Of a stretch of DNA of 64,000 bases, positions 13-13,527 are shown one piece after another (position 1 is the stretch's first letter; the number at the start of each line of letters is the position of its first letter). The notes under the pieces are model-generated. The model saw only the letters and a program-made list of their open reading frames with translations, was not told where the DNA came from and made no database searches. The DNA lies in IMG/VR virus record IMGVR_UViG_3300027759_004177, positions 186,001-250,000 of that record, one strand, 5' to 3'. Both the position numbers and the translations under genes were made by a program.

Positions 13-1308
13 TTAATATCCAATACGTCGGAGAAAGTGTTTATATCTTGGTGCATAATCTAGTATCGTGTTGTTCCTGATTGTTTCAAAACTTTTTAAG
101 AAACTGACTAATTCTTTCAGTGATTCCTCTGCATCTGCAGGCGGGGTGTATGTTTTAACAAACTCCAGGTACTCAGTGGCCAACTGTGCAATAATCTCGT
201 GACTTAAATCACTTCTGCGAGTATTCACTTGCGGAGTATACGATCCTAATCGATCAACCACAGCCTGTAACTTTGCAACGGTTTCTTGTCTGATATCGTC
301 TGGCATCAGTTCCATACGCAAACAACGTGGTTGGTGCAATATGTTACAGCTCTCGGCGATAATGTTGTGTTCGATCATGAACTCAAAAACTTGGTCCAGT
401 TCGCTGATAGTAAACAAGTTAGGAGTGATACGTAGTTCTAGTTTTAATCCGGGATTACGATCACGCAAGGCCACAAACTTGAGAATGTTTGCCAAGATCT
501 GATCAGTAGGTCCTGGATAACGCACATAATCGTTTAATGACGTAACTGACTCTATACTGATACCTAGATGAAACTCTTGGAATCTAGGTATCAATTGTTC
601 TATACGTTCATCGTATATTGTGCCGTTGGTAGTTGTGCCAACTATTAGATCTTGTCCATCCAAGTGCTCGCAAATGTCGTAGAAGGCTTGATTATATAAT
701 GTTTCTCCACCCAGGAAGTGTATGTAACGTATGTATGGAAACGATTTTAACTCTGCAACAAAGCGATTGACTGTTGCTGAATCTTCAGTCCAAGACTGAT
801 ACGGCTTGGGTTCAGCAAATAATCGACTATCCAGCTTGTTTAATTTTTTATAGTCTGCAACAAGACGTGAGCTTGCTGTGGGGTCGCACATGATACAGGC
901 ACTATTACAAGTATTACCTAGGTCTATTTGTAAATCTGTTGGAAAATGTGGGCTGGCACCCGCATGACTGTTGCTGTATTCAAATACAGGCAAGTGTGGG
1001 CTAGAACGAAAGGTTAATGGAAACTCTGCAAGACCAATAGCACTTTTGTTTAGTTGTCTAACACGACCCGAAAGTTTTCCAAACTGATCTTGGTAGTAAC
1101 AAGGCTCACACTCTTTGGGTTTGTTGCCGGCTAATAGTTGTTGACGCAGGTCTCTCATGGGCCCACTGTTGTAAAAATCCATCAGCGAAGTTGTGCGTAT
1201 GTTGAAGGCGGTAGCACCGTTTTTGCTCCAGCGACACACATCATAACTACCATCGTAAGTTAATCTAATGTGGAACCAGGGACTTGAACAGAATGAGTCT
1301 TTTAACAT
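13..1308 (-). CDS. Radical SAM protein with N-terminal SPASM/twitch-like Cys cluster
   Basis: CxxxCxxC (CNSACIMC), GGE motif (FLGGETL), N-terminal CSSPW...C...CEPC. Confidence 0.85.
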   Translation of the reverse strand: MLKDSFCSSPWFHIRLTYDGSYDVCRWSKNGATAFNIRTTSLMDFYNSGPMRDLRQQLLAGNKPKECEPCYYQDQFGKLSGRVRQLNKSAIGLAEFPLTFRSSPHLPVFEYSNSHAGASPHFPTDLQIDLGNTCNSACIMCDPTASSRLVADYKKLNKLDSRLFAEPKPYQSWTEDSATVNRFVAELKSFPYIRYIHFLGGETLYNQAFYDICEHLDGQDLIVGTTTNGTIYDERIEQLIPRFQEFHLGISIESVTSLNDYVRYPGPTDQILANILKFVALRDRNPGLKLELRITPNLFTISELDQVFEFMIEHNIIAESCNILHQPRCLRMELMPDDIRQETVAKLQAVVDRLGSYTPQVNTRRSDLSHEIIAQLATEYLEFVKTYTPPADAEESLKELVSFLKSFETIRNNTILDYAPRYKHFLRRIGY

Positions 1309-2353: not shown

Positions 2354-3433
2354 TTAGTTTAAAAAATAATCATTTAGAATGGTTGTGTCTACTTTAAAGT
2401 TCTCTTTTATTATAACACGTTTATCTATATCTTGCAAGATCTTTATCAGATTACCGTAAGCTGAGTTAGCCACTTTTTGGAAGTGTAGTCTATTATGGTA
2501 GCTTGGTGCAGGATTGCCTGCTGTGAGCAAACTCTTAACTAGATGGTCTGCACGTTCTTGTGGATATGGTACACTATCGTAGGTTTCATCTATAGTATCG
2601 CCGAAGGTTTCAAATCCTAACTCTCGGATCTTGGCCAGGCTATGTTGTCCACCGTAGACCACAAACGGGTGACCTAGCATTAGACTCTTGTAGGTCTTTT
2701 CGGTTGGGAACCATTCGTTCTGTGTGGTTTCACTGGCTATGCTTATCGTGGTATTGTAGTAGTGACTAGGATAGTAGGCATAGAAACGAAAGTCCGGATG
2801 TACAAATGGATCAGGCCAATCTTGATCTGGTCCAAAGCCGTCTGCACTTTTACCTGACCTATGACTCCATATACTGGCATCAAGTAGCCCGGCTGTTTTA
2901 AATAATTCAAAGAATCGTTCTCTATTGGTGCGCCATTCTCCATTTAAGAACAGGAACCGGTGCGTCTTTACTGCTGTGTCAATTTGATTGCATGTGTACT
3001 CTAATCTGGCACGATTAAACTCATTGTTGATAATCCACGCAAAGAACTCGGGCATGTTATAGTTCTTTGCATAACCGTCAATATCCCAATCGCCACACTT
3101 GATTAAGTATCCATCAATATTTTTTGCTTGCAGTTGCTCTGCGGTTGGGCAAAAACTTGCCGATAAGGTTGCATAGCTTTCACTTGGATAATAAAATACA
3201 ATCTTGTTGTTGTGTCCTGCGGCACGATCAATTATGGCTTGAGCAATATCGTGTCCGGGATCACCACAGGCTGTCTCCATAACAAAGCAGTCTGTGACAA
3301 TGGTAGCACCGTCAGGTATTGCACTCACATCAGACTCCACGTAATCCACACCGTGCAGAGACAGAGTAGCACGTAATAAATCCGCTTGTTTTTCGGCTGG
3401 ACGTTTGAGTGGATGTAATATTAGATATAACAT
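2354..3433 (-). CDS. Glycosyltransferase-like protein (SET/TEKT family)
   Basis: SET...TEKTYKSLMLGHPFVVYG...LGFETF...DETYD, shared with 27914 and 29642 ORFs; resembles GT10-like C-terminal motif. Confidence 0.55.
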   Translation of the reverse strand: MLYLILHPLKRPAEKQADLLRATLSLHGVDYVESDVSAIPDGATIVTDCFVMETACGDPGHDIAQAIIDRAAGHNNKIVFYYPSESYATLSASFCPTAEQLQAKNIDGYLIKCGDWDIDGYAKNYNMPEFFAWIINNEFNRARLEYTCNQIDTAVKTHRFLFLNGEWRTNRERFFELFKTAGLLDASIWSHRSGKSADGFGPDQDWPDPFVHPDFRFYAYYPSHYYNTTISIASETTQNEWFPTEKTYKSLMLGHPFVVYGGQHSLAKIRELGFETFGDTIDETYDSVPYPQERADHLVKSLLTAGNPAPSYHNRLHFQKVANSAYGNLIKILQDIDKRVIIKENFKVDTTILNDYFLN

Positions 3434-3443
3434 GGATTTTTCA

Positions 3444-3453
3444 TAAATATTTA
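3444..3453. promoter_or_regulatory. Palindromic TAAATATTTA: overlapping T4-type late promoter cores for two divergent genes
   Basis: Lies between divergent starts at 3433 (-) and 3483 (+); same TAAATA core precedes many genes in the window. Confidence 0.55.
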
Positions 3454-3482: not shown

Positions 3483-4112
3483 ATGAAAAATCTTGTCTAC
3501 TATCCAGATTTGCCCTCAATTCCTGAACACCTGTTGGTTGATGTTGAAAAAATAGTGTTAGAACGTATTGCCAATGATCCGCCACATCCAAATCCGTTGT
3601 GTCAAAGAGAAATGGCTGTTTCTCGCGGTGAAGAAAAAATTGTAGGTGGGCGATATCGCGGAGACGAAGCAGATGAACCACTACAATCTTGGGTTAGAGA
3701 AAATATTGGTGATGATCTAGCACCAAAAGCACGAGTACGGATTGCCAGCCACGGGGAACAAGGAAATTTAAGTGTTCCACACAGTGATGCTTCTAGAGAT
3801 TGGAGTCTGTTATATCTTGTCAATTTAGGTGGTGACAACGTGGAAACAATTTTTTGGCAAGAAAAAAATCAACCAGTGAGACGACCAAATGCAACTTTTC
3901 CTCCTAGCTATGATGATTTGATTGAACTAGAACGTGTGACATTCCCTAGTCATACTTGGGTCATGCTTGACTCATTGGTTTTACACAGCATAGAAAACAT
4001 GGAAAGTTTGCGTATAGCAGTACAGGTAGGATTCAAAGACGGTAGCACAACTCTACAAAAAATTTGGCCTGAAAGAGATTGGACTCAGCTAGAAATTCCC
4101 AGCTCTAATTGA
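3483..4112 (+). CDS. Putative Fe(II)/2-oxoglutarate oxygenase-like (DSBH) protein
   Basis: HxD (PHSD)...distal H (LHSIEN)...R (LRIAVQV) facial-triad pattern. Confidence 0.5.
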   Translation: MKNLVYYPDLPSIPEHLLVDVEKIVLERIANDPPHPNPLCQREMAVSRGEEKIVGGRYRGDEADEPLQSWVRENIGDDLAPKARVRIASHGEQGNLSVPHSDASRDWSLLYLVNLGGDNVETIFWQEKNQPVRRPNATFPPSYDDLIELERVTFPSHTWVMLDSLVLHSIENMESLRIAVQVGFKDGSTTLQKIWPERDWTQLEIPSSN

Positions 4113-5058
4113 TTTTTTGACCAATTGGTAACCAGGTGTTTCTCAAACGTTCTATGTGTTGATTAAATCCTGCGGTGGTTGCTTCGTCTGGGTTGGAAAA
4201 AATAAAATTTTCATTGTTAAATCTTTTTACTTCGTCAGTTTCTAATGCCCGGCTAAACTTTGTTTGATACCAAGCCACAATCTCAGGTGCTGTATCCGGC
4301 GGCAACATCAGTGCCCATGCTGCAAAAATATCAATACCCTTTCCATTGATCTTCAATGTTTCCACTGCCGGTAACTTGGCCAATCTTTTTTCTCCTGTGA
4401 TAGCAATAATTTTTACTTTGCCTGCTTCTACCAATGGGCGGGCAACACTGATTGGCATGATGCCAAACTCAATGTTGGATTCTGACGCCACTCCAGTTAC
4501 TGCCTGTAGCGGTCCTTGAAAGTTTACATGGCCGACTAAATTTTTATTTGCGCCACTGTTGAGCATAATATATTCAAATGCTAGGCGATGTACTGGACTA
4601 CCCACTGCAACATTAACTGGTTTTCCAGGACTTTTTATATATGATAAAAATTCAACAGGTGTATTTACACGACTACCGGGGTGTGCCACTATCGCTAATG
4701 GACTTTTTGCCATGCCCATCACATTGGTAAAACTGTTGTATTCCCATCGTTTTAGATCTTTTTGGAAGATATCGTTACCTACGTAGGTTGCAAAATAGCT
4801 GGGAACACTGATGGTGTATCCATCAGGTGCAGCTTCATACAATGCATTGCTGGCCAACACAGTATCTGCACCAGGTTTATGTTCTATCACGTATTGAAAG
4901 GTTGGATGATTTTTCTGTACTTGTGTGGCCAACAATCGAAACTGAACTTCGTTGCCACTGCCGGGAGCGAATCCAATTATTACTCTCACAGGTCTGGTAG
5001 GTTCCCATGCCCAGGCCATGAGAGGAGCCATAAGCAAAACAAACAATAATTTTTTCAT
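4105..5058 (-). CDS. Tripartite tricarboxylate transporter (Bug/TctC) substrate-binding protein
   Basis: Signal peptide; PTRPVRVIIGFAPGSGNE, VIEHKPGA, APDGYTI, LPPDTAPEIV. Confidence 0.9.
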   Translation of the reverse strand: MKKLLFVLLMAPLMAWAWEPTRPVRVIIGFAPGSGNEVQFRLLATQVQKNHPTFQYVIEHKPGADTVLASNALYEAAPDGYTISVPSYFATYVGNDIFQKDLKRWEYNSFTNVMGMAKSPLAIVAHPGSRVNTPVEFLSYIKSPGKPVNVAVGSPVHRLAFEYIMLNSGANKNLVGHVNFQGPLQAVTGVASESNIEFGIMPISVARPLVEAGKVKIIAITGEKRLAKLPAVETLKINGKGIDIFAAWALMLPPDTAPEIVAWYQTKFSRALETDEVKRFNNENFIFSNPDEATTAGFNQHIERLRNTWLPIGQKIN

Positions 5059-5080
5059 TTTTTCTCCGACTAATTGATTT

Positions 5081-5629
5081 TTACAACAAAAACAAATTTG
5101 ATATTTCAGTTGGTAACCAAGGTGTGTTCATACGTTCTGGATGCCAAACTACTCCTGCAATACGTTGATCAATCCAGGCTTCGCAGTGGCCATTGTTATC
5201 ATACACCAGTCCGGTTGCAGAAGAGTGTAACTGAGTAATAGCCTGAGTATGATACGAATTTACTGTGTGTTCTTGTCCAAAATATTCAACAGCGTGTTCT
5301 GTGTCCATGTGTCCTTCACATGCCTCAACCTGTCCGCCCAGTGCATCTGTAAGCAGAAATGCACCGTGACAAATTCCCAAGATTGGTTTCTGTTGTTTCA
5401 TCACAGCAGTGGCCAATTTAAATTCAACAGTTCGTCTGATTGCACTATCGTCGCCGCCGGTGATAATCAAACAGTCGTGACCGTCGGCTAATTGTTCAAA
5501 ATCTTGATCGAGTCTATTGGGAATAAAAGAAAGCGTGTGATTTTTTAAATAACGATACCAACCGTGTTCTATGCTATCGTATGCCCTACCTTTGTGATAC
5601 AGAACTCTTTGTGTAAGAGCTATCTTCAA
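5081..5629 (-). CDS. Class I glutamine amidotransferase (peptidase C26 / PuuD-like)
   Basis: IITGGDD, ILGICHG nucleophile elbow, VNSYH, WHPE; probable TTG start at 5629 just after upstream stop. Confidence 0.85.
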   Translation of the reverse strand: MKIALTQRVLYHKGRAYDSIEHGWYRYLKNHTLSFIPNRLDQDFEQLADGHDCLIITGGDDSAIRRTVEFKLATAVMKQQKPILGICHGAFLLTDALGGQVEACEGHMDTEHAVEYFGQEHTVNSYHTQAITQLHSSATGLVYDNNGHCEAWIDQRIAGVVWHPERMNTPWLPTEISNLFLL

Positions 5630-5630
5630 A

Positions 5631-6341
5631 TTACCAACCGTAGGCTTCTGCTGCCAATTCCCGAGCACCAGGACTGTCGCAAGTATTACCGACAATAATG
5701 TCGTATAATTCTTTACGCATTTTGGAGGCCATGGTCAATGCACGTTCAGCAACTTCTGGGTTTTCGTCTTGCAAGCGTTCTAAACGAAGTGCACCAATGT
5801 TGGCATGGAATGCTTCATCTTTGCCAATGCGATTGTATTTTTCAGCAACAAAAGAATCATAGGCACCAATTTCACTCATTGTTAACCAGCTGGTACTGGC
5901 ACGACCTTCGGCAATTATTTGATAAACAGCCAAGGCCACTTCGTCTTGGGCAGTTTCGTACGATTTCATTGTGGCAGCACCTTTGTCGTTGGCTTTGCGA
6001 CTAAATTCACGATCTAAATATTCTTGAGTGTTGACTTCTGCACCGGTAATGTGCTCTAACACTTCCTTGACCAAACGGAAGTGTGTCGCTTCATCTTGAG
6101 CTTGTTTGGCCAACAGCAACATTTCTTCAGCAGGAGCTGAAGTTGGAAGATTGGCAATTGCTTCAGCGACACCGACCATGTTCATGTATTCATTGGCTAA
6201 ACGACCTTGGAAATGCAACAGGTATTCTTCTTTTGTGCGTGCCGGATCGTTGAACCAATGGCGAATGTTCATCATGCTGGCTTCAAATAATGGTTTGTTT
6301 TCTTCTTGTATTTTTAGTACTAGTTCTTTGCCGGTCAGCAT
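5631..6341 (-). CDS. Ferritin-like di-iron carboxylate protein
   Basis: Two DExxH motifs (QDEATHF, KDEAFHA), each with an upstream E (NEY, AEG); helical; SD GGAG. Confidence 0.8.
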   Translation of the reverse strand: MLTGKELVLKIQEENKPLFEASMMNIRHWFNDPARTKEEYLLHFQGRLANEYMNMVGVAEAIANLPTSAPAEEMLLLAKQAQDEATHFRLVKEVLEHITGAEVNTQEYLDREFSRKANDKGAATMKSYETAQDEVALAVYQIIAEGRASTSWLTMSEIGAYDSFVAEKYNRIGKDEAFHANIGALRLERLQDENPEVAERALTMASKMRKELYDIIVGNTCDSPGARELAAEAYGW

Positions 6342-6371
6342 AGGAATCTCTCCAAATTAATTCAGTATATG

Positions 6372-6407
6372 TATTTATGTTTATTTGCAATTTATAAAAC
6401 ATAAATA
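6372..6407. promoter_or_regulatory. Back-to-back late promoters in an 11-bp inverted repeat
   Basis: tatttatgttt (6372-6382) / aaacataaata (6397-6407); each arm contains TAAATA pointing at a divergent gene. Confidence 0.55.
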
Positions 6408-6416
6408 GTTTACTCA

Positions 6417-7010
6417 ATGGATAAAAAATGGTTTTTTTACGGCTGTGCTGACAATGAGTTTACTGTTACGTATGCTCTGTATGAGCACACTTCTGACTGT
6501 TTTTTTCTAGTAGATACAGACGAAAAATCCATGAAAGATTTGGCTTTTTTGTTTTCCAGTAGATATCAACTAACAATTTGCCAGCTTAACACCGCACACA
6601 ATTATTTACCTGAGCTAATAGACAATACAGTATGTGTAAATTGGACTTTGACCAACAAACAAGACATTCCTATCGCTAGATTTCCACGTCCACATATGAT
6701 TGTTTCCGCAGAAGGCCTGGTTGAAAAATCGAATAACAATTTGCCATGGAATTACAACAACGAACAAAATTACTTGATGGCTGCAAAACATTGGTTGTCC
6801 CACCCTGCACTCAAAGGATATCCTACTGCTCTTGCTCACTGGGGTGATTTTTACCACACTTCTTCAATGGTGCCAGGAGCACCATTTGAAAATCGATTTG
6901 TATATACATTGTCCCAAATTAAAAAAATAATTTATCAAGAATTCGATCTACCAACTGCTCACCAAAAAATTAATCAACTGTTGACGACATATGAATTTGA
7001 TATACATTAA
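6417..7010 (+). CDS. Hypothetical protein
   Basis: 197-aa ORF after TAAATA, overlapping the next gene. Confidence 0.7.
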   Translation: MDKKWFFYGCADNEFTVTYALYEHTSDCFFLVDTDEKSMKDLAFLFSSRYQLTICQLNTAHNYLPELIDNTVCVNWTLTNKQDIPIARFPRPHMIVSAEGLVEKSNNNLPWNYNNEQNYLMAAKHWLSHPALKGYPTALAHWGDFYHTSSMVPGAPFENRFVYTLSQIKKIIYQEFDLPTAHQKINQLLTTYEFDIH

Positions 7011-8142
7011 TAGCAGAGTCGATTTGACTGCATACGAAAAACAGCTAGGCATTCAGTTCTGTCAAGAGTTTACAAACTATCAAACTATTTCTCAACAGCT
7101 ATGGTATGAACAACATTTCCCACACAATCGTTCTGGAGTTGATCCAATTTGGAGTCTTCAAACCCCCAAAAAATACCAATTGTGTTTGCCCTCCTTTTGT
7201 CATAACAAAACATTTGAGGATATCACAGATCAACGTGCAATCGAATTAATCAATCGTTGCCAACAAAAAAATCAACCCATGTTTATTACGTGGTCGGGCG
7301 GGATTGACAGTACTTTGATAGTTGCTGCATTATTTAAACATGCCGATCGAGAATATCTAAAACAGATAACTGTGCTAATGAACAATTCCAGTTATTATGA
7401 GAATCCTGTATTTTTTGATCGTATAATTTCTCCTTATTTTTCCTACAACAATATTGATCATGCAATTTGTTATTGGAAAGATTCTGTTGTTGTTAGCGGA
7501 CAACCGGCAGATCAAATGTGGATTCACGCAGATATTGTCAAACTTGAAAATCGCTTTCCAGGGGCCGGAGATATTGACCCACACACTGATCCGGATTTGC
7601 TATTGGATTTTCTTTCAAAAAAAAGCAATAAGAATCATGCTGAATGGTTTTATTGGCTAGTTTTAAATACTGCTGCCGAAGCAAAAATTTCAATTGTTAG
7701 CTATAGAGATTTTTTCTGGTGGGCAAATTTTAATTTTTACACCGTGGGAAACTGTTTAAAATCATACCTGGCTGAAGCTGAATGTTTCAACAACGAACAG
7801 TTTTTATTGTATCAGCAAAATTACATACCCTGGTTCTTGACAGACGACTACCAATTTTGGAGCATACACAATAACAACACCGGAGTTAAAATGTTGCAGG
7901 GCTTGGGAAGCTACAAATTGGTTGCAAAAAAATATATACTGGAAGTAGATAATAATCAATACTACTATCATTACAAATACAAAACAGGCAGTCCCAACCA
8001 GCATTTGTTTGCACAGAAAAAAACTACCGAAGATAAAATTAAAAAAGTTTTTGCGTTATATGATGATGGATCTGCTGTTATGTCAGATGATTCCAAGTCA
8101 ATTGGTCAATTAATTTTGAACAATATCAATCTTTATCATTGA
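6991..8142 (+). CDS. PP-loop (N-type ATP pyrophosphatase) family protein
   Basis: ITWSGGIDST PP-loop; VSGQPADQM resembles the asparagine-synthetase SGEGADE motif. Confidence 0.75.
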   Translation: MNLIYINSRVDLTAYEKQLGIQFCQEFTNYQTISQQLWYEQHFPHNRSGVDPIWSLQTPKKYQLCLPSFCHNKTFEDITDQRAIELINRCQQKNQPMFITWSGGIDSTLIVAALFKHADREYLKQITVLMNNSSYYENPVFFDRIISPYFSYNNIDHAICYWKDSVVVSGQPADQMWIHADIVKLENRFPGAGDIDPHTDPDLLLDFLSKKSNKNHAEWFYWLVLNTAAEAKISIVSYRDFFWWANFNFYTVGNCLKSYLAEAECFNNEQFLLYQQNYIPWFLTDDYQFWSIHNNNTGVKMLQGLGSYKLVAKKYILEVDNNQYYYHYKYKTGSPNQHLFAQKKTTEDKIKKVFALYDDGSAVMSDDSKSIGQLILNNINLYH

Positions 8143-8165
8143 TCAAATAATAAATACCTATTCCC

Positions 8166-9461
8166 ATGCAAAACAAAATAGAACATACCTCCGTTGCCGG
8201 TGTTAACTTTGAACCTAATAAAAAACTGGGCTACTATTTGGTCGACAACCAAATCTATTACAACAAATATCATGCGTTATTAAACGCATCTAAACAGAAA
8301 CAATCTATAAAATGGTTCTTTAACGAAGATGTGTTTGTACGTTACCCGTGGCACATTGAACCAGAAGAATCTTTAGATGAGTTGTATCGTCAAAGAGCAC
8401 AACAACTTAGAGATGAATATGATTATATTCGAGTGGAGGCCAGTGGCGGCAGCGATAGCACTACAGTTATTTTTAGTTTTCTACTTAATAACATACCACT
8501 AGACGAAGTGGTATTTCGATATCCCAAAGGTGGAGACAAGGATGTAGTAGGAAATGCTCGAGACCTACGCAGTGAAAATACTCTAAGCGAATGGGAGTTT
8601 GCAGCAAAACCGTTGCTAGATTGGATTGCTACAAACTATCCTGGTGTTAAAATTACTGTGTATGATTACGCAGGAACTTTAGTGCGTGAAGCCGAAGAGA
8701 AGGATGAAAGTTGGGTGTTCCGTACTAGACACTATTTACAACCCGGTCACATAAACAAATACCAAGCCATAGCCATAGACGACCATAAACGGTTAGTTGA
8801 AAAGAACCTGCGGATTTGTGTGTTATGGGGTGTTGATAAACCTAAAATTACTGTCAAAGACGGAAAGTTTTTTTTATATTTTCATGACGGGCAAGCCAGT
8901 CATAGCGATCAAGCGATAGGCGAATACACCAACATAACCAATGAATTTTTTTATTGGAGCCCTGACGCCTGCAAATTATTGGCCAAACAAGCACATTCAA
9001 TAAAAAACTGGTTTGAAATGCCCGCCCACTATAATATGCAAAACGTATTACATTGGCCCAATTCAAACTTTAGTGGTAGAACTATCTACGAACAAATTGT
9101 TAAAAGTGTAATTTATTCTAAATACGATTTGCAAACATTTCAAACCAATAAGCCAACTAACAATATTTGGAACGAAATGGATTATTGGTTCCATCACAAT
9201 TTTAAAGATACTCAAGCATATCGTGTATGGGAATCTGGTATTGACTATTTGATCTCTACCTTGGATCCTGCATTTGTTGAAAACCTACACGGTCGACCGA
9301 CCAATATCATGATGTTTGAAACCCCAATGTATTATTTTGGAGATAGCAATATACCTAATTTGGCCTTGCCGTTCACTCCCGGGGCAGATCTTAAAGAGAA
9401 AAGAGTCGATTCTTCTAAGCAACATAGACACGTGATCAACGGACGCCTGGTAATTTATTAA
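8166..9461 (+). CDS. PP-loop (N-type ATP pyrophosphatase) family protein, paralogue of 13538..14725
   Basis: LYRQRAQQLRDEYDYIRVEASGGSDST; WGVDKP. Confidence 0.8.
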   Translation: MQNKIEHTSVAGVNFEPNKKLGYYLVDNQIYYNKYHALLNASKQKQSIKWFFNEDVFVRYPWHIEPEESLDELYRQRAQQLRDEYDYIRVEASGGSDSTTVIFSFLLNNIPLDEVVFRYPKGGDKDVVGNARDLRSENTLSEWEFAAKPLLDWIATNYPGVKITVYDYAGTLVREAEEKDESWVFRTRHYLQPGHINKYQAIAIDDHKRLVEKNLRICVLWGVDKPKITVKDGKFFLYFHDGQASHSDQAIGEYTNITNEFFYWSPDACKLLAKQAHSIKNWFEMPAHYNMQNVLHWPNSNFSGRTIYEQIVKSVIYSKYDLQTFQTNKPTNNIWNEMDYWFHHNFKDTQAYRVWESGIDYLISTLDPAFVENLHGRPTNIMMFETPMYYFGDSNIPNLALPFTPGADLKEKRVDSSKQHRHVINGRLVIY

Positions 9462-9462
9462 T

Positions 9463-9538
9463 TGGTGCCCTGGGTAGGATTCGAACCCACAATGTCCGCT
9501 CGGTAAAGCGGTGACTATACCATTTTGTCTACCAGGGT
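9463..9538 (-). tRNA. tRNA-like gene, undetermined identity (6-nt anticodon loop TTACCG, A1/C72 mismatch)
   Basis: ACCCTGG acceptor, D arm, CCGCT/AGCGG stem, GTTCGAATC T-loop, CCA end. Confidence 0.75.
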
Positions 9539-9540
9539 GT

Positions 9541-9615
9541 TGGTTGCGGGGGACAGATTCGAACTGTCGATCTCCAGGTTATGAGCCTGACGGGTTGCCT
9601 CTTCCCTACCCCGCG
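9541..9615 (-). tRNA. tRNA-fMet (CAT), initiator type
   Basis: CGCGGGG...CCCCGCA-A-CCA with C1/A72 mismatch; loop CTCATAA. Confidence 0.9.
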
Positions 9616-9618
9616 ATA

Positions 9619-10221
9619 TTACATTGTAGGACCGTTGCCGTTCCTAAATCCAATACTTCCACCCTCTGCTTCAATCCGTTTGATAACATCTTCGAACAAG
9701 ATAGGTGCAAAATCTGTCTGTTCCACGCATACGCAATGATAACGGACATCAATCCATTGCCTTACTCCGCGGGTCATAAACTCGTGTGTGGTTTGTGCTG
9801 TTTTCATCACGCGATTAGCATGGAGGTGACCGTGGATGTTGACACCAAAACGACCCAGGCTTTCCTCATGGATAGGGATATGACTGAGTATCATTCCGTT
9901 CATCACATGGTAAGCACGCAGTTCACGAAAGTGTTCACGATAGTCGGTATCCCGGAAGATGTCGTGATTACCGCGGATAAGAACTTTGTCACCGTTGAGC
10001 CTACGCATAATAGCAAGACTCTTACGGCTCATAACTACATCACCCAAGTGGTAAACTTTATCGTTGGGACGTACACGTTCGTTCCAACGCTCAACCATGG
10101 CTTCGTCCATTTCGTCTGCTGAGTCCCAAGGACGAAGTTTTGTTACACCATCGTTACGGACAAAGCGACATACACCTGCATGACCAAAGTGCGTGTCGCT
10201 GACTAAAAATACTGCTGGCAT
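9619..10221 (-). CDS. Calcineurin-like metallophosphoesterase
   Basis: SDTHFGH, HLGD, RGNHD, SHIP, HGHLH motifs; SD GGAGG. Confidence 0.9.
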   Translation of the reverse strand: MPAVFLVSDTHFGHAGVCRFVRNDGVTKLRPWDSADEMDEAMVERWNERVRPNDKVYHLGDVVMSRKSLAIMRRLNGDKVLIRGNHDIFRDTDYREHFRELRAYHVMNGMILSHIPIHEESLGRFGVNIHGHLHANRVMKTAQTTHEFMTRGVRQWIDVRYHCVCVEQTDFAPILFEDVIKRIEAEGGSIGFRNGNGPTM

Positions 10222-10246
10222 ACGTGCCTCCTTTCTTTTCTAAACA

Positions 10247-10320
10247 TGGCGCCGGTCCAGGGAATCGAACCCCGATCAGCGGTTTTGGAGACCGCTGTAA
10301 TGCCATTATACCAGACCGAC
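10247..10320 (-). tRNA. tRNA-Trp (CCA)
   Basis: Anticodon loop CTCCAAA, full cloverleaf, CCA end. Confidence 0.92.
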
Positions 10321-10321
10321 C

Positions 10322-10399
10322 TGGAAGTGAGGGTCGGATTTGAACCGACGGGGTTAGGGATTTGCAGTCCCTTGCATTGGGCCACTCTGCCACCTCACT
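10322..10399 (-). tRNA. tRNA-Cys (GCA)
   Basis: Loop CTGCAAA, U73, CCA end. Confidence 0.92.
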
Positions 10400-10407
10400 G
10401 CTGTTAC

Positions 10408-10481
10408 TGGAGCGGGATATCGGAATCGAACCGATGACGAAAGATTGGAAATCTTTAGTTTTGCCCCTAAACTAATCCCGC
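10408..10481 (-). tRNA. tRNA-Gly (TCC)
   Basis: GCGGGA acceptor, loop TTTCCAA, U73, CCA. Confidence 0.92.
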
Positions 10482-10490
10482 ATTATAATC

Positions 10491-10566
10491 TGGCGCTCCC
10501 GACCGGATTCGAACCGGTGTACTCGCCGTGAAAGGGCGATGTCCTAGGCCTCTAGACGACGGGAGC
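10491..10566 (-). tRNA. tRNA-Glu (TTC)
   Basis: Loop CTTTCAC, cloverleaf, CCA. Confidence 0.92.
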
Positions 10567-10572
10567 CTAACT

Positions 10573-10656
10573 TGGTGGAGAACACTGGGATCGAACCAGT
10601 CGTGCCATAGGCGCCGGATTTACAGTCCAGTGCATCACCATTGATGCTTCTTCTCC
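10573..10656 (-). tRNA. tRNA-Tyr (GTA)
   Basis: Loop CTGTAAA, long variable arm, CCA. Confidence 0.92.
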
Positions 10657-10662
10657 AAAACT

Positions 10663-10739
10663 TGGCGGAGTAGACGGGACTCGAACCCGCGACCCTCGGC
10701 GTGACAGGCCGATATTCTAACCAACTGAACTACCACTCC
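10663..10739 (-). tRNA. tRNA-Asp (GTC)
   Basis: GGAG acceptor, loop CTGTCAC, CCA. Confidence 0.92.
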
Positions 10740-11532: not shown

Positions 11533-12021
11533 TTAAGCCTTTTTAATCTTGTCAATCAAACCAGGTGAAAATGTTGGTTCAAACTTTTCATAAACTGCTT
11601 GAGCTTTATGTTTCCACTCAGCTGTTTCTTCTTTGGAAAGTTCAATAACATCAATACCATCAGCAACCAATTGCTGTTTGGCATCTTCACCATCCTGGAT
11701 CGTGACTTCACGTTCTCTACGTCCTGCTTTGATAGCAGCATCCTTGATCACGGCTTGAACCTCGGGACTCAATGTCTTCCAGAAGTCGTCACGCATGATC
11801 ATGGTTGTCAAAAACAAACTGTGCTTTGAGTCAATCACGCTTTTGGTAACGTCATTCTGCTTCAAGGGATAGATACGACTGTAAACAGTTTCTCCACCTT
11901 CGCAATCACCTTCGATGATGTGGGCACGAGTGTCTTCGGTTTCACAAACAAACACGTCGACACCACCCAAGACCTTGAATGTTTCTTGTGCCACTGGATT
12001 ACGATTGGTTCTTAGCTTCAT
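11533..12021 (-). CDS. TRAP substrate-binding protein (DctP-like), C-terminal half
   Basis: MKLR...ETFKVLGG, H-S-L-F, FWKTLSPEVQAVIKDAA, LVADGIDVIELSKEE typical of DctP C-terminus. Confidence 0.8.
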   Translation of the reverse strand: MKLRTNRNPVAQETFKVLGGVDVFVCETEDTRAHIIEGDCEGGETVYSRIYPLKQNDVTKSVIDSKHSLFLTTMIMRDDFWKTLSPEVQAVIKDAAIKAGRREREVTIQDGEDAKQQLVADGIDVIELSKEETAEWKHKAQAVYEKFEPTFSPGLIDKIKKA

Positions 12022-12488
12022 TTCTTGCCTAGATCATCTAGACCAGAGACTGGCTTGTCAACAATAATGTTACGGAAACCGCCTGAGTAAGTGAATGCCA
12101 TACCGCGAACATTGGACTTTTCAGTGATCTTCTCTAATAGACCTTCGCCAACTTCACCTTCTAGCACACGGGTTGCATGGTCGTGATCTTCAAAAATAAA
12201 TGGCATTTCTAGGGCTAACATATCGTGCTCAATATCTTCGGCCAACCATGTGGTGTACATTTGGCTCATTTCAATCTTGCCTTGTTCCATTAGATCTAGC
12301 AAATCGTGTTTAGTAACCAACACACCGTCGTTGTACTTCATGCTGTACTCGCTTAGTGTCATAACTTCAACTTCGATCTTTTCTGCACTTTGAGCTTCGT
12401 TTACAAAACGCTGAAAGTCTTCTGCTGCACGTACAAATAGGCTTAGTGGCTCGTGAGCAATTACCCAACGAATTTTAGTAGTTTTCAT
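12018..12488 (-). CDS. TRAP substrate-binding protein (DctP-like), N-terminal half, no signal peptide
   Basis: LEMPFIFEDHDHATRVLEGEVG, SGGFRNI, DDL; SD AAGGA before ATG 12488; ATGA overlap with the C-terminal half. Confidence 0.8.
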   Translation of the reverse strand: MKTTKIRWVIAHEPLSLFVRAAEDFQRFVNEAQSAEKIEVEVMTLSEYSMKYNDGVLVTKHDLLDLMEQGKIEMSQMYTTWLAEDIEHDMLALEMPFIFEDHDHATRVLEGEVGEGLLEKITEKSNVRGMAFTYSGGFRNIIVDKPVSGLDDLGKK

Positions 12489-12513
12489 GTGTATTTCCTT
12501 TATAATTTTTTTG

Positions 12514-12592
12514 GCGGCGTTCCGGTGTAACACACCGGTAAAAGGGTTTGCTACCCTAGGCGTCTGACGTCAACTGAATGTCGGCGTTGCTA
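12514..12592 (-). ncRNA. Candidate structured cis-regulatory leader RNA
   Basis: Between TAAATA (12597-12602) and SD: hairpins AGGGT-AGCAA-ACCCT and CCGGTGT-GTT-ACACCGG, ACGCC three times. Confidence 0.4.
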
Positions 12593-12612: not shown

Positions 12613-13527
12613 TTATTTGTCCAGTTTAACTGTAGCACTCAAACGGCGCCATAACACCAGCTGACTGTTGTACCAGTTGTCTAGCTCAGAATCTGGAATT
12701 TGATTGTTAGGAATACAAGTATCTGCGGCATTGGCATCACGTACACTTTTGCTACGTGCAGCTTCTACAAAAATCTTGCGAATTTCACGAAACTTTTCTT
12801 CAGGAAATTTGCGTGGAATAAAGATCTGTTGCGAGCTACTCATGTCTGCAATTGCCGGTGCAAATCCTTGATTTTTCAACAAGGGAATACCTTTAATACT
12901 TTCTTTGCCGGTCATGCCCAACCAATAAACCCGTTTGGTAGCGTCTGGCTTTGTGTACTGCTCGCTATCGCCAATGAATCCCACAGCAAAATCAGTTTGC
13001 CCACCCAAGACATTTAACAATGCTTCGTTGGTGCTTTTAAACGGAACAATCTGCATGTTTGGATATTGTGCAGCCACTTGCAAGGCTACCAGGTGCGTGG
13101 TTGCCCCAAGTCCACTGATACCAATGTTTAACTTGGCGTTTCGAGGAACATCCTTCCATGTTTTATACTTTGTGCTTGTGATAACAAACGGTGCAATACA
13201 CATGGGCATTAGGCTTCTAAAGTCGGCCATGTTATGACTTTCCGTTGGAAACAGGTTGGGACGGATAAATCCTGCCGAACTGTTGATCCAGATTGAGTTG
13301 GGAGTGTTTAACACATGGTTGGCTGCAACTGTGCCACCAGCACCAGGTTTGGCATCAAATACAAATGTGTATTTGCTTTGAAGTTTGTTGCTTTCATCAG
13401 CAAGTGTGCGATAGAAGTTTGCTGCTGTGTCTGCTGGCGACCAAGAATAAAACATAGTTACTGTTTCTTTCTGCGCCATGGCAGATAAACTGACCATGGT
13501 TAATAGTGTGGCTAATAATCGTTTCAT
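12613..13527 (-). CDS. Tripartite tricarboxylate transporter (Bug/TctC) substrate-binding protein
   Basis: Signal peptide; KPGAGGTVAANHV, SGLGATTHL, VPFKS...VLGGQTD. Confidence 0.88.
   Translation of the reverse strand: MKRLLATLLTMVSLSAMAQKETVTMFYSWSPADTAANFYRTLADESNKLQSKYTFVFDAKPGAGGTVAANHVLNTPNSIWINSSAGFIRPNLFPTESHNMADFRSLMPMCIAPFVITSTKYKTWKDVPRNAKLNIGISGLGATTHLVALQVAAQYPNMQIVPFKSTNEALLNVLGGQTDFAVGFIGDSEQYTKPDATKRVYWLGMTGKESIKGIPLLKNQGFAPAIADMSSSQQIFIPRKFPEEKFREIRKIFVEAARSKSVRDANAADTCIPNNQIPDSELDNWYNSQLVLWRRLSATVKLDK

What the first reader, a model, noticed from the sequence alone, without database searches (positions are those of the whole stretch)
4105..9461. Divergent late-promoter module: ferritin-like di-iron enzyme, glutamine amidotransferase and Bug SBP opposite an unknown ORF and two PP-loop ATPases
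Seen: two tightly packed operons firing outward from an inverted-repeat pair of TAAATA cores at 6372-6407. Established: a class I GATase plus a PP-loop ATP-pyrophosphatase is the two-part architecture of GMP synthase-type amidotransferases, and ferritin-like di-iron enzymes include the tRNA hydroxylase MiaE and N-oxygenases. Inference: an uncharacterised phage pathway that amidates and oxidises a small molecule, nucleotide or tRNA, with the SBP binding the substrate or product.
Basis: partly seen in the sequence, partly recalled or inferred. Interest (0 to 1): 0.65.

Follow-up and report, generated by a model that had tools for sequence, protein, structure and literature searches.

The report
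Phage di-iron oxidase/amidohydrolase cassette
A 357-kb uncultivated jumbo phage carries a recurrent, uncharacterised gene cassette: a virus-specific di-iron oxidase coupled to a glutamine-amidotransferase-type hydrolase, often with a secreted carboxylate-binding protein, facing an unknown protein plus an asparagine-synthetase-like ATP enzyme. The sixth gene of the finding belongs to a separate gene family.

Summary
The six ORFs, their domain calls and the inverted ATAAATA pair are real. ATAAATA is a positional late-promoter-like motif: 53 of 83 genome copies lie within 60 nt, in sense, upstream of start codons, including tail tube and sheath genes.

The region is a mosaic, not one six-gene pathway.

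1. Ferr (di-iron, 4 Glu/2 His) is followed directly by the class I GATase in 14 of 15 phage loci, spanning jumbo phages and T4-like phages. A TctC/TctA component is adjacent in 4 of them.
2. The unknown 197-aa ORF plus the 383-aa PP-loop protein form a divergent partner pair in 5 jumbo-phage contexts. Four of these lie within 1 kb of tRNA genes.
3. The 431-aa PP-loop protein has an asparagine-synthetase-B-like fold and its own ATAAATA. It belongs to an expanded paralog family of the syntenic backbone, present in relatives that lack units 1 and 2.

The GATase's constant partner is therefore the di-iron protein, not a PP-loop enzyme, and its nearest family is a stand-alone gamma-glutamyl-amide hydrolase.

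Best mechanistic guess, inferred only: oxidise a glutamine or gamma-glutamyl-linked nitrogen, hydrolyse it, then ligate the released nucleophile to an ATP-activated carboxylate. This works like DnfA/DnfC and TsnB6/7/9, but the phage proteins are not members of those families. No characterised homologue was found.

The parts
3483..4112 (+). o209: viral double-stranded beta-helix (2OG/Fe(II)-oxygenase-like) protein. It is a neighbour and possible accessory, with its own ATAAATA at 3443-3449, 33 nt upstream.
   Evidence: ESM Atlas structural neighbours include an Asp_Arg_Hydrox cluster (TM 0.61) and 2OG-FeII_Oxy_5 clusters, which are leads only. An HxD...H pattern is visible in the translation. 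A homologue lies 3 kb from the cassette in L015. Promoter motif.
4105..5058 (-). TctC/Bug-family periplasmic solute-binding protein with an N-terminal Sec-type signal peptide. It is the last gene of the Ferr-GATase-TctC operon.
   Evidence: PF03401, 3.4e-29, 102.7 bits against a cutoff of 27. The signal peptide is read from the translation. A 46%-identical orthologue sits in the L034 Ferr cluster. TctC follows Ferr-GATase on the P0198 contig, and TctA plus TctC-like genes flank Ferr in L020.
5081..5629 (-). Stand-alone class I glutamine amidotransferase-fold hydrolase (182 aa; true start TTG 5629, 1 nt after the Ferr stop).
   Evidence: PF00117 at 5.4e-15 and Peptidase_C26 at 3.7e-13. The best NCBIfam hit is gamma-glutamyl-CDP-amidate hydrolase at 2.4e-18, far below its equivalog cutoff. 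The Cys-His-Glu triad (GxCHG, HPE) is invariant in 11 homologues, which also fix the start.
5631..6341 (-). Ferr: virus-dominated ferritin-like di-iron carboxylate protein (236 aa). It is the first gene of the minus-strand operon, with a GGAG Shine-Dalgarno sequence and ATAAATA 30 nt upstream.
   Evidence: Invariant E51, E84xxH87, E145 and E176xxH179 in 32 sequences. AF2 pLDDT 95.1. VIA-align Z 17.2 for CADD, 16.6 for HrmI, and 13.8-14.8 for ADO, PaaA, MMOH and R2lox. The three nearest ESM Atlas clusters are 95-100% viral. Only 127 representatives were found among 1.84 billion proteins. Of the 34 remote relatives, 21 hit DUF455.
6372..6407 (.). Divergent promoter region. ATAAATA lies on the minus strand (6372-6378) and the plus strand (6401-6407), inside a perfect 11-nt inverted repeat (6372-6382 / 6397-6407).
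   Evidence: Genome-wide positional enrichment of ATAAATA.
6417..7010 (+). o197: conserved protein of unknown fold, translationally coupled to PP383 by a 20-nt overlap. Its start codon lies 9 nt after ATAAATA and has no Shine-Dalgarno sequence.
   Evidence: There are no Pfam, PHROG or NCBIfam hits. Homologues sit in the same position in L015, L017, L019 and L033. The Atlas search gave no lead.
6991..8142 (+). PP383: PP-loop (adenine nucleotide alpha-hydrolase) protein of the asparagine-synthetase-like kind, without a glutaminase domain. It has the lowest G+C of any gene of 150 aa or more in the genome.
   Evidence: WSGGIDST is invariant in 22 sequences. Sub-threshold hits to Asn_synthase, ATP_bind_3, asn_synth_AEB and LarE. 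hhalign against the PP431 family gives 94% probability over 180 columns. G+C is 0.349 against a gene mean of 0.427, sd 0.029.
8150..8156 (+). Separate ATAAATA motif, 9 nt before the PP431 start codon.
8166..9461 (+). PP431: member of an expanded phage-specific PP-loop family with an asparagine-synthetase-B-like fold. It is not part of the conserved cassette.
   Evidence: 542 homologous clusters, all unannotated. There are 3 paralogs in this genome. AF2 pLDDT 84.3, pTM 0.88. VIA-align Z 11.2 for E. coli AsnB (294 residues aligned), 9.3 for beta-lactam synthetase and 9.1 for TilS. Two to three tandem copies occur in L004 and L005, which lack Ferr, GATase, o197 and PP383.
9463..10739 (-). tRNA gene cluster (8 Rfam tRNA matches) convergent with PP431. 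The first is an odd tRNA-like gene at 9463-9538.
   Evidence: tRNA genes also lie next to the cassette in L015, L017 and L033.

Best explanation
SHOWN.
The region is part of an accessory-gene island of a 357-kb jumbo myophage. It is transcribed from ATAAATA late-type promoters and is a mosaic of three units.
- Unit 1 is the operon Ferr -> GATase -> TctC. Ferr is a virus-dominated ferritin-like protein with the canonical 4-Glu/2-His di-iron ligand set. It is followed within 1 nt by a stand-alone class I GATase-fold hydrolase with an intact Cys-His-Glu triad, then by a secreted Bug/TctC carboxylate-binding protein.
- Unit 2, transcribed divergently, is o197 -> PP383. This is an unknown protein translationally coupled to an asparagine-synthetase-like PP-loop adenylating enzyme that lacks any glutaminase domain.
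- Unit 3, PP431, is a paralog of a separate expanded AsnB-fold family. It has its own promoter motif and independent synteny.

INFERRED MECHANISM.
Units 1 and 2 process an amide or gamma-glutamyl-linked nitrogen in three steps.
- Ferr uses O2 and its di-iron site to oxidise, most plausibly N-oxygenate or hydroxylate, glutamine's amide or a gamma-glutamyl-X compound.
- The GATase-fold enzyme then cleaves the gamma-glutamyl amide bond, releasing glutamate and the (oxidised) nitrogen nucleophile, NH2OH or NH3.
- PP383, with o197 as accessory or substrate-presenting subunit, adenylates a carboxylate and captures that nucleophile to give a hydroxamate or amide.

The TctC protein supplies or senses the carboxylate substrate through the host's TctAB membrane components. 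In T4-like phages the same Ferr-GATase(-TctC) core is combined instead with a cupin and two unknown families (here called X210 and Y240). The core therefore generates an intermediate, and lineage-specific partners consume it. The logic parallels DnfA/DnfC hydroxylamine formation and the TsnB6/7/9 hydroxamate module.
For: Anatomy and family or fold assignments.

Late-promoter motif.

Ferr-GATase coupling. GATase lies directly after a Ferr copy in 14 of 15 phage loci: the window, L009-L012, L015, L017, L019, L021, L023, L025, L033, L034 and the P0198 contig. Spacing is 1 nt or an overlap. L009 is a close relative (Ferr 87% identical) and has the pair at another genomic site without o197/PP383, so the pair moves as a unit.

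o197-PP383 lies divergently beside it in 5 contexts with otherwise different flanks.

TctC or TctA is adjacent in 4 loci, and one of these proteins is a 46%-identical orthologue in a different phage lineage.

The GATase is nearest to a stand-alone gamma-glutamyl-amide hydrolase family, with near full-length coverage.

PP431, with which the PP383 profile aligns, has its best structural matches in asparagine synthetase B, beta-lactam synthetase and carbapenam synthetase. The hydroxyamidotransferase TsnB9 is also among the hits at Z 7.5.

Precedent from the literature:
- Di-iron DnfA with class I GATase DnfC makes NH2OH via glutamate gamma-hydroxamate (PMC11160463).
- The TsnB6/7 amidooxygenase plus the AsnB-like TsnB9 form a minimal hydroxamate module (PMC13418202).

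Nitrogen context: a relative (L033) encodes P-II and an ammonium transporter 3 kb from the cassette.
Against: - No substrate, product or activity is known for any of the four core proteins, so the chemistry is by analogy only.
- Ferr is not an AurF-family protein. It has no PF11583 hit even at E<=10, and AurF, CmlI and DnfA are absent from the top 50 structural matches. Its remote relatives are mostly DUF455 (21 of 34), which is itself uncharacterised. Its 4-Glu/2-His ligand set is the hydroxylase, desaturase or R2 type.
- Bacterial Ferr homologues have no adjacent GATase (Janthinobacterium, Massilia, Tahibacter, Bdellovibrionales).
- L020 has Ferr with TctA and TctC-like genes but no GATase.
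- o197 and PP383 are compositional outliers here, which may indicate separate acquisition.
- Four of the five jumbo-phage cassettes lie within 1 kb of tRNA genes. The small-molecule model does not explain this.
- Late-promoter timing is unusual for a metabolic gene set.
Confidence: 0.35

Rival explanations
1. The class I GATase delivers ammonia to one or both PP-loop synthetases, as in two-subunit GMP synthase, NAD synthetase or Gat-QueC. Ferr is a separate tailoring oxygenase, and the target is a nucleotide or small molecule.
For: GATase and PP383 co-occur within 1.5 kb in 5 jumbo-phage contexts. PP383 and PP431 lack a glutaminase domain of their own. GMP synthase ATP-PPase domains are among the structural matches (Z 7.4-7.9). 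L010 has a PP383-like 491-aa gene in the same operon as Ferr-GATase.
Against: GATase is glued to Ferr, not to a PP-loop gene, in every context. It also occurs with Ferr where no PP-loop gene lies within 7-8 kb (L021, L034) or at the adjacent site (L009). GATase lies on the opposite strand from PP383. Its closest family is a stand-alone hydrolase rather than a synthase-coupled subunit. PP431 occurs in arrays without any GATase in L004 and L005.
Confidence: 0.2
2. tRNA (or other nucleic-acid) modification module. PP383, and perhaps PP431, act like TilS, MnmA, TtcA or NcsA-type PP-loop enzymes on the phage's own tRNAs. Ferr acts like a MiaE-type tRNA hydroxylase, and the GATase supplies nitrogen.
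For: The cassette is flanked on both sides by tRNA arrays in L015 (34 tRNAs). tRNA genes lie 0.7 kb away in L017 and 173 nt away in L033, and in the window they begin 2 nt after PP431. TilS (Z 9.1), NcsA (8.4) and MnmA are among the PP431 matches. Four of the 34 remote Ferr relatives hit MiaE_2.
Against: AsnB-type enzymes match better and over more residues (Z 11.2, 294 aligned, against 170 for TilS). Ferr-GATase occurs in T4-like phage and bacterial loci with no tRNA genes nearby, but with solute-binding proteins, cupins and sulfotransferases. A secreted TctC has no obvious role in tRNA modification. tRNA arrays are common insertion zones for accessory genes, so adjacency may be incidental.
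Confidence: 0.12
3. Nutrient (nitrogen) scavenging auxiliary metabolism. The secreted TctC captures an external N-containing or gamma-glutamylated carboxylate. Ferr and the GATase-fold hydrolase degrade it to glutamate and ammonia for the infected cell. o197/PP383 would be unrelated neighbours.
For: TctC or TctA recur next to Ferr. The GATase resembles gamma-glutamyl hydrolases such as Peptidase_C26 and PuuD-like proteins. P-II and an ammonium transporter lie near the cassette in L033. The phage carries further SBPs (DctP, a second TctC-like protein).
Against: The genes sit behind late-type promoters shared with virion genes, a timing when nutrient uptake gives little return. o197/PP383 accompany Ferr-GATase in 5 different genomic contexts, which argues against chance neighbours. 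Most loci (11 of 15) have no transporter component adjacent.
Confidence: 0.13
4. Peptide or protein modification (RiPP-like or virion protein maturation). The AsnB-fold proteins PP383 and PP431 form lactam or isopeptide bonds, as lasso-peptide cyclases and beta-lactam synthetase do. They would work with the phage's many radical SAM/SPASM enzymes, and o197 would be a substrate or chaperone.
For: Beta-lactam synthetase and carbapenam synthetase are among the top matches. The genome has 13 radical-SAM-like ORFs, several with SPASM domains, some adjacent to this island. Late expression coincides with virion genes.
Against: No precursor-peptide-like gene or leader peptidase was identified. o197 is 197-216 aa and well conserved, unlike RiPP precursors. 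The model does not explain Ferr-GATase-TctC. Radical SAM genes are not consistently adjacent to the four-gene cassette.
Confidence: 0.07

Closest known systems
DnfA/DnfB/DnfC system of Alcaligenes (hydroxylamine formation via glutamate gamma-hydroxamate; PMC11160463)
   Same: It pairs a di-iron oxygenase with a stand-alone class I GATase-fold protein. That protein hydrolyses the oxidised glutamine amide instead of feeding a synthase. The genes are adjacent.
   Different: DnfA is an AurF-family protein (PF11583). Ferr has no such hit, is about 100 residues shorter than AurF-type enzymes, and is nearest to DUF455. No DnfB-like reductase was identified next to the phage genes. No activity has been tested.
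TsnB6/TsnB7/TsnB9 hydroxamate-forming module of Streptomyces (trichostatin A, benzohydroxamic acid; PMC13418202, PMC11160463)
   Same: It combines an amide-oxidising di-iron enzyme with a small accessory subunit and an asparagine-synthetase-like ATP-dependent transferase that moves the nitrogen nucleophile onto a carboxylate. TsnB9 is among the structural matches of the PP431 model (Z 7.5).
   Different: TsnB9 carries its own Ntn glutaminase domain. PP383 has none, and a separate class I GATase-fold protein is present instead. There is no detectable sequence homology of Ferr to TsnB7 or of o197 to TsnB6 (not directly tested for TsnB6). The phage cassette is split into two divergent operons.
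Asparagine synthetase B / beta-lactam synthetase / carbapenam synthetase family (Pfam Asn_synthase, PP-loop)
   Same: PP431's predicted fold aligns with E. coli AsnB over 294 residues (Z 11.2) and with beta-lactam synthetase (Z 9.3). Both PP431 and PP383 have the SGGxDS PP-loop.
   Different: Sequence scores stay below the Pfam and NCBIfam thresholds. There is no N-terminal catalytic Cys and no full glutaminase domain. PP431 is a multi-copy phage family.
Two-subunit GMP synthase (GuaAa GATase + GuaAb ATP-PPase)
   Same: It is a separate class I GATase plus a PP-loop ATP pyrophosphatase. Both folds are represented here.
   Different: Gene-neighbourhood evidence ties the GATase to the di-iron protein rather than to the PP-loop proteins. 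GMP synthase models score far below their cutoffs (42 bits against 172-198).
DUF455 / MiaE-like ferritin-clan proteins
   Same: They share the four-helix di-iron carboxylate core with E...ExxH twice. Remote Ferr relatives hit DUF455 (21 of 34) and MiaE_2 (4 of 34). A DUF455 cluster is the first non-viral structural neighbour in the ESM Atlas.
   Different: Ferr itself scores 14 bits against a DUF455 cutoff of 34.3. DUF455 has no known function. Ferr is almost exclusively viral and is coupled to a GATase.
Cj1417 gamma-glutamyl-CDP-amidate hydrolase and Peptidase_C26/PuuD-type gamma-glutamyl hydrolases
   Same: They are stand-alone class I GATase-fold enzymes that remove a gamma-glutamyl carrier from a modified nitrogen. 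This is the best-scoring NCBIfam family for the phage GATase, with near full-length alignment.
   Different: The score is 67 bits against an equivalog cutoff of 250, so this is not the same enzyme. The other MeOPN pathway genes are not adjacent in this genome.

Membership tests
Class I glutamine amidotransferase (PF00117) | Pfam score above the gathering cutoff | tested here: met
   56 bits against a cutoff of 22.8. Peptidase_C26 scores 50.2 against 20.5.
Class I glutamine amidotransferase (PF00117) | Cys-His-Glu catalytic triad (GxCxG nucleophile elbow, HPE) | tested here: met
   C109, H185 and E187 (long-ORF numbering) are invariant in 11 homologues.
Synthase-coupled GATase subunit (GMP-synthase-type two-part amidotransferase) | Conserved genomic coupling of the GATase with the PP-loop synthetase | tested here: not met
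   The GATase follows Ferr in 14 of 15 phage loci. A PP383-type gene is nearby in only 6 of them, and on the opposite strand in 5 of those. PP431 arrays occur without a GATase.
Synthase-coupled GATase subunit (GMP-synthase-type two-part amidotransferase) | Physical GATase-synthetase interface and glutamine-dependent synthetase activity | not tested
TctC/Bug solute-binding proteins (PF03401) | Pfam score above cutoff, and an export signal | tested here: met
   102.7 bits against a cutoff of 27. The N-terminal sequence reads as a Sec signal peptide ending AWA.
Ferritin-like di-iron carboxylate proteins (clan) | E...ExxH...E...ExxH ligands on a four-helix core | tested here: met
   E51, E84xxH87, E145 and E176xxH179 are invariant and lie on helices 37-63, 71-99, 134-158 and 163-193 of the model. 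Ferritin-like oxidases match at Z 13.8-14.8.
AurF/DnfA/TsnB7 N-oxygenases (PF11583) | Sequence membership in PF11583 | tested here: not met
   No hit at E<=10. Only 1 of 34 remote relatives touches AurF. AurF-type structures are not in the top 50.
MiaE tRNA hydroxylase | Sequence membership in MiaE or MiaE_2 | tested here: not met
   Ferr has no hit. Four of 34 remote relatives hit MiaE_2 weakly.
DUF455 (PF04305) | Pfam score above the gathering cutoff | tested here: not met
   14 bits against a cutoff of 34.3. It is nevertheless the nearest family through remote relatives, 21 of 34.
Heme-oxygenase-like di-iron oxidases (CADD, UndA, HrmI, SznF) | HO-like fold with a 3-His/3-carboxylate ligand set | tested here: inconclusive
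   These give the top Z scores (CADD 17.2, HrmI 16.6). The conserved ligands, however, are 4 Glu plus 2 His in the ferritin pattern, and the sequence neighbours are in the ferritin clan.
PP-loop ATP pyrophosphatases (adenine nucleotide alpha hydrolases) | SGGxDS motif after the first strand of a Rossmann-like domain | tested here: met
   SGGIDST (PP383) and SGGSDST (PP431) are invariant in their families. The PP431 model matches AsnB, GMPS, NAD synthetase, LarE and TilS PP-loop domains.
Asparagine synthetase family (PF00733 / TIGR01536) | Score above curated cutoff, and an N-terminal Cys glutaminase domain | tested here: not met
   PP383 scores 14.6 bits against 21, and 15.1 against 267. PP431 has no hit. 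Neither protein has Cys2 or a roughly 190-aa Ntn domain. Only the fold is AsnB-like.
T4-type late promoter | TATAAATA-like element positioned upstream of late (virion) genes | tested here: met
   The relaxed form NATAAATA fits. 53 of 83 ATAAATA copies lie within 60 nt sense-upstream of starts, with modes at 17-27 nt and at 5 nt. The motif precedes the tail tube, sheath and virion proteins. The strict TATAAATA octamer is not enriched.
T4-type late promoter | Phage-encoded gp55-type late sigma factor, and mapped transcription starts | not tested
   gp55 was not searched for.

The most novel reading that the evidence does not exclude
Phages of at least two lineages encode a self-contained nitrogen-oxygenation pathway. 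A virus-specific di-iron enzyme would N-oxygenate glutamine's amide. A dedicated GATase-fold hydrolase would release hydroxylamine. In jumbo phages, a glutaminase-less AsnB-type enzyme would then install it on a carboxylate, so that infected cells make a hydroxamate or another N-O compound late in infection. Candidate roles are a metal chelator, an enzyme inhibitor or a nucleic-acid or virion modification. This would be the first phage-encoded hydroxylamine or hydroxamate chemistry, and a third, independently evolved version of the Dnf/Tsn logic.
Probability: 0.15. Interest if true: 0.8.

Novelty: new variant of a known kind. Interest (0 to 1): 0.55.

Why it matters
The Ferr-GATase pair is one of the few multi-gene accessory units shared between freshwater jumbo phages and T4-like phages. 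It is nevertheless entirely unannotated.

- The di-iron protein forms a small, sequence-isolated, almost exclusively viral family. Only 127 representatives were found among 1.84 billion proteins.
- Its constant coupling to a hydrolase-type GATase points to chemistry on amide nitrogen. That chemistry has only recently been recognised in bacteria (the Dnf and Tsn systems).
- Defining its product would assign function to several hundred viral dark-matter proteins. It could also reveal a new phage-made metabolite or modification, and might explain why these phages export their own solute-binding proteins.

The analysis also gives a usable late-promoter motif for this uncultivated phage clade, including an apparent leaderless-transcript class.

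Tried and rejected
- Megablast and tblastn of the region and of both PP-loop proteins against 50,697 INPHARED phage records gave no match.
- PDB sequence-profile searches gave only noise or sub-threshold hits for the PP431, Ferr and PP383 families. The GATase profile gave only generic class I GATase matches.
- Co-folding of Ferr with the GATase returned no verdict (score 0.00 against a mark of 0.32, controls not run). It is evidence neither for nor against binding.
- ESM Atlas searches gave no lead for o197.
- Sigma-70 promoter and intrinsic terminator scans were at chance level.
- The strict T4 octamer TATAAATA is not enriched. Only the 7-mer is.
- The genome search could not draw relatives for a virus record, and it did not hold the records behind L004, L005, L015, L017 or L020. 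Absence of the cassette elsewhere in those genomes was therefore not checked.
No read or transcript evidence was obtained, and read laying was not used.
- Literature searches for the gene combination in phages and for DUF455 function found nothing relevant.
- Considered and rejected as best explanation: 7-deazaguanine (Gat-QueC) DNA modification, because there are no QueC, QueD, QueE or DpdA signatures in these genes.
- Considered and rejected as best explanation: the C. jejuni phosphoramidate pathway. Only the hydrolase resembles it, far below cutoff. APS-kinase-like genes occur only in distant loci L020 and L021.

Full report
**Setting**

The window is bases 186,001-250,000 of a 356,865-bp IMG/VR virus record, rated complete. 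It encodes a large terminase, tail sheath, tail tube, sheath stabiliser and many virion proteins. It also carries at least 10 tRNA genes. It is therefore a jumbo myophage. No cultured relative was found: megablast and tblastn against 50,697 phage records gave nothing.

Bases 1-26,000 of the window form an accessory island. The island holds:
- radical SAM/SPASM genes;
- a cytidine/dCMP deaminase;
- solute-binding proteins of the TctC and DctP families;
- PP-loop proteins;
- an AhpC/CMD pair;
- tRNA clusters.

**Checking the observation**

The six ORFs exist as described.

- TctC (PF03401, 102.7 bits) and class I GATase (PF00117, 56 bits; Peptidase_C26, 50 bits) pass their Pfam cutoffs.
- The 236-aa protein (Ferr) passes no cutoff. 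Across 32 homologues, E51, E84xxH87, E145 and E176xxH179 are invariant. Its AlphaFold model is a confident helical bundle (pLDDT 95.1).
- Both PP-loop proteins carry an invariant SGGxDST motif. They have only sub-threshold Asn_synthase, PP-loop and LarE hits.
- Homologue alignment moves the GATase start to TTG 5629, one base after the Ferr stop codon. This gives 182 aa.

**Promoters**

The intergenic region 6342-6416 holds ATAAATA on both strands, inside a perfect 11-nt inverted repeat. The strict T4 octamer TATAAATA is not over-represented: 18 copies against about 28 expected.

ATAAATA, in contrast, is the second most enriched 7-mer upstream of genes, after the Shine-Dalgarno 7-mer TAAGGAG. 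In upstream non-coding regions of at least 30 nt it is 26-fold enriched.

Of the 83 copies in the genome, 53 lie within 60 nt, in sense, upstream of a called start codon. The spacings show a main mode at 17-27 nt and a second mode at exactly 5 nt, seen in seven genes. The 5-nt spacing is the geometry expected for leaderless transcripts if initiation lies about 6 nt after the motif, as in T4. That last point is my own knowledge and was not tested here.

The motif precedes the tail tube, tail sheath and virion protein genes. "Late-type promoter" is therefore a fair reading.

- Ferr has the motif 30 nt upstream, with a GGAG Shine-Dalgarno sequence.
- o197 has it 9 nt upstream, with no Shine-Dalgarno sequence.
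- A third copy sits 9 nt before the PP431 start, in the 23-nt gap after PP383. PP431 probably has its own start.

**Is it one module?**

Gene-neighbourhood comparison says no.

(a) Two syntenic relatives of 358 and 364 kb (L004, L005) keep the flanks. The flanks are the radical SAM gene, the deaminase, o359, the metallophosphoesterase, the tRNAs, the DctP pieces, a TctC-like gene and PP395. Between o359 and the phosphoesterase, however, they have only two or three tandem PP431 paralogs. There is no o209, TctC, GATase, Ferr, o197 or PP383. PP431 also has two paralogs in this genome, at 53% and 32% BLASTP identity, and 542 unannotated homologous clusters. It is thus a backbone family.

(b) Ferr is followed directly by the GATase in 14 of 15 phage-type loci. 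Spacing is 1 nt or a short overlap. The loci are the window, L009, L010, L011, L012, L015, L017, L019, L021, L023, L025, L033, L034 and the P0198 contig. These span jumbo phages and T4-like phages; L010, for example, lies next to the gp14 neck and gp15 genes. L009 has a Ferr 87% identical to this one, yet carries the pair at a different genomic site without o197/PP383.

(c) o197 plus PP383 lie divergently next to Ferr-GATase in five contexts whose outer flanks differ. The five are the window, L015 (322 kb), L017 (281 kb), L019 and L033.

(d) TctC recurs.
- The P0198 contig has Ferr-GATase-TctC.
- L034 has three Ferr copies, two TctC genes, a cupin and the GATase in 7 kb. One of its TctC proteins is 46% identical to the window's over the full length, with the same signal peptide.
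- L020 has TctA-Ferr-TctC-like.

(e) In T4-like phages, and in Janthinobacterium and Massilia chromosomes, Ferr travels with a cupin and a roughly 210-aa unknown family. This genome lacks both. Bacterial loci have no GATase.

(f) Compositionally, PP383 (G+C 0.349) is the lowest of the 276 genes of 150 aa or more, and o197 (0.360) is among the five lowest. The gene mean is 0.427 with sd 0.029. Ferr, GATase and TctC are typical.

**What the proteins are**

*Ferr.* The best structural matches are heme-oxygenase-like di-iron oxidases and TenA proteins (CADD Z 17.2, HrmI 16.6). Ferritin-like oxidases follow at Z 13.8-14.8 (ADO-type, PaaA, MMOH, R2lox). For helical bundles such scores are only moderately specific.

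The ligand pattern is the ferritin type. An exhaustive profile search found only 127 representatives among 1.84 billion proteins. Of 34 remote full-length relatives, 21 hit DUF455, 4 hit MiaE_2 and 1 hit AurF. The three nearest ESM Atlas clusters are 95-100% viral.

Ferr is therefore a sequence-isolated, virus-dominated branch of the ferritin clan nearest to DUF455. It is not an AurF- or MiaE-family member.

*GATase.* The triad is intact. The best family match is gamma-glutamyl-CDP-amidate hydrolase (2.4e-18, near full length, though 67 bits against a cutoff of 250). This is ahead of GMP synthase subunit A.

*PP431.* The model is good (pLDDT 84.3, pTM 0.88). VIA-align gives Z 11.2 with 294 aligned residues for E. 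coli asparagine synthetase B. Human ASNS scores 10.6-10.8, beta-lactam synthetase 9.3, TilS 9.1 and carbapenam synthetase 8.7. The hydroxyamidotransferase TsnB9 is also listed at 7.5. Viral structure neighbours beyond its own family are annotated as asparagine synthase.

*PP383.* It aligns with the PP431 profile over the PP-loop half (hhalign probability 94%). It is a distinct family of only 21 clusters.

*o197.* It has no detectable relatives outside its syntenic homologues.

*o209.* It looks like a double-stranded beta-helix oxygenase. This is a lead only.

**Mechanism**

What is shown is the coupling pattern and the folds. The rest is inference.

A GATase-fold enzyme that always follows a di-iron oxidase, and that resembles stand-alone gamma-glutamyl-amide hydrolases, fits the "oxidise on a glutamyl carrier, then hydrolyse" logic. 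There are two precedents.
- Alcaligenes DnfA (di-iron) hydroxylates glutamine's amide, and DnfC (class I GATase) releases hydroxylamine (PMC11160463).
- In Streptomyces, the TsnB6/7 amidooxygenase plus the AsnB-like TsnB9 form a minimal hydroxamate module (PMC13418202).

The phage cassette contains an analogue of each part. Ferr stands for the oxidase, the GATase for the hydrolase, and PP383 for the ATP-dependent transferase without its own glutaminase domain. o197 is a possible accessory subunit.

I therefore propose the following. Ferr oxidises glutamine or a gamma-glutamyl-X compound. The GATase liberates the nitrogen nucleophile. PP383/o197 ligate it to an adenylated carboxylate. TctC is tied to that carboxylate.

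I give this 0.35, because several facts weigh against it:
- Ferr is not AurF-like.
- No activity is known.
- Bacterial Ferr homologues lack the GATase.
- Proximity to tRNA genes in four of five jumbo-phage cassettes is unexplained. In L015 tRNA arrays flank the cassette on both sides; the other distances are 0.7 kb in L017, 173 nt in L033 and 2 nt after PP431 in the window.

The rivals are listed with their evidence. They are classical GATase-to-PP-loop ammonia transfer, tRNA modification, nitrogen scavenging and peptide modification.

**Limits**

- Co-folding of Ferr with the GATase gave no verdict.
- Whole-record searches of relatives were not possible.

**Verdict**

It is wrong on the key pairing and on the unity of the six genes. 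The conserved core is a new variant of the di-iron-oxidase-plus-amidohydrolase theme, in a virus-specific form.

Noticed in passing
whole genome G000; in the window 13-1308, 19965-21212, 21442-22614, 23679-24833, 25318-26202: Thirteen ORFs show BLASTP similarity to the two radical SAM/SPASM queries. This is an unusually large radical-SAM paralog set for a phage, and some copies lie in tandem arrays (G000 318-325 kb).
   Followed up: partly
window 13538-14725 (PP395) and 12613-13527 (o304): A PP431-family paralog is immediately followed by a weak TctC-like SBP with a signal peptide. The same PP-loop plus TctC-like pairing recurs in L004 and L017. PP395 lacks the Ser after the SGGxD motif.
   Followed up: partly
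window 12018-12533 and 11533-12021: A DctP (TRAP) solute-binding protein is split into two abutting ORFs, covering profile positions 11-134 and 138-284. Relatives carry both 162-aa pieces and a 318-aa full-length form. This could be a frameshift, a programmed split or decay.
   Followed up: no
genome-wide; in the window genes 30693-32162, 38875-39357, 40177-41652: Seven genes have ATAAATA exactly 5 nt before the start codon and no Shine-Dalgarno sequence. This suggests a class of leaderless late transcripts. The only two cases with 9-nt spacing are o197 and PP431.
   Followed up: partly
window 9463-9538 (minus strand); L004 12616-12690: A tRNA-like gene with an anticodon loop ARAGORN cannot assign ('???'; Rfam tRNA 41 bits). 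It is conserved directly downstream of a PP431 paralog in a relative.
   Followed up: no
window 6417-8142: PP383 has the lowest G+C of any gene of 150 aa or more in the genome (0.349), and o197 (0.360) is among the five lowest. The gene mean is 0.427 with sd 0.029. This suggests acquisition from a lower-GC source or strong amino-acid bias.
   Followed up: partly
window 3483-4112: o209 belongs to a viral family whose predicted fold resembles Asp/Asn beta-hydroxylase and 2OG-Fe(II) oxygenases, with an HxD...H pattern. It has its own ATAAATA. A homologue lies 3 kb from the cassette in L015, and a paralog lies at G000 63130-63930.
   Followed up: partly
L033 11084-12798: A related jumbo phage encodes a P-II nitrogen regulator and an ammonium transporter 3 kb downstream of its Ferr-GATase pair.
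   Followed up: no
L015 1-19146: A 322-kb relative packs 34 tRNA genes into 19 kb around the cassette. They include a CTA-anticodon (amber-reading) tRNA, and there is an RF-1-domain ORF of 125 aa. This is a possible hint of stop-codon manipulation.
   Followed up: no
window 14737-15782 and 1690-2130: The accessory island also holds an AhpC peroxiredoxin plus CMD (AhpD-like) pair and a cytidine/dCMP deaminase. An AhpC also lies near the Ferr homologue in Massilia (L024).
   Followed up: no
window 2354-3433: o359 shares a roughly 70-100-aa C-terminal segment with at least nine other ORFs of 326-405 aa across the genome, several of them beside structural genes. This is a multi-copy family of unknown role.
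   Followed up: no
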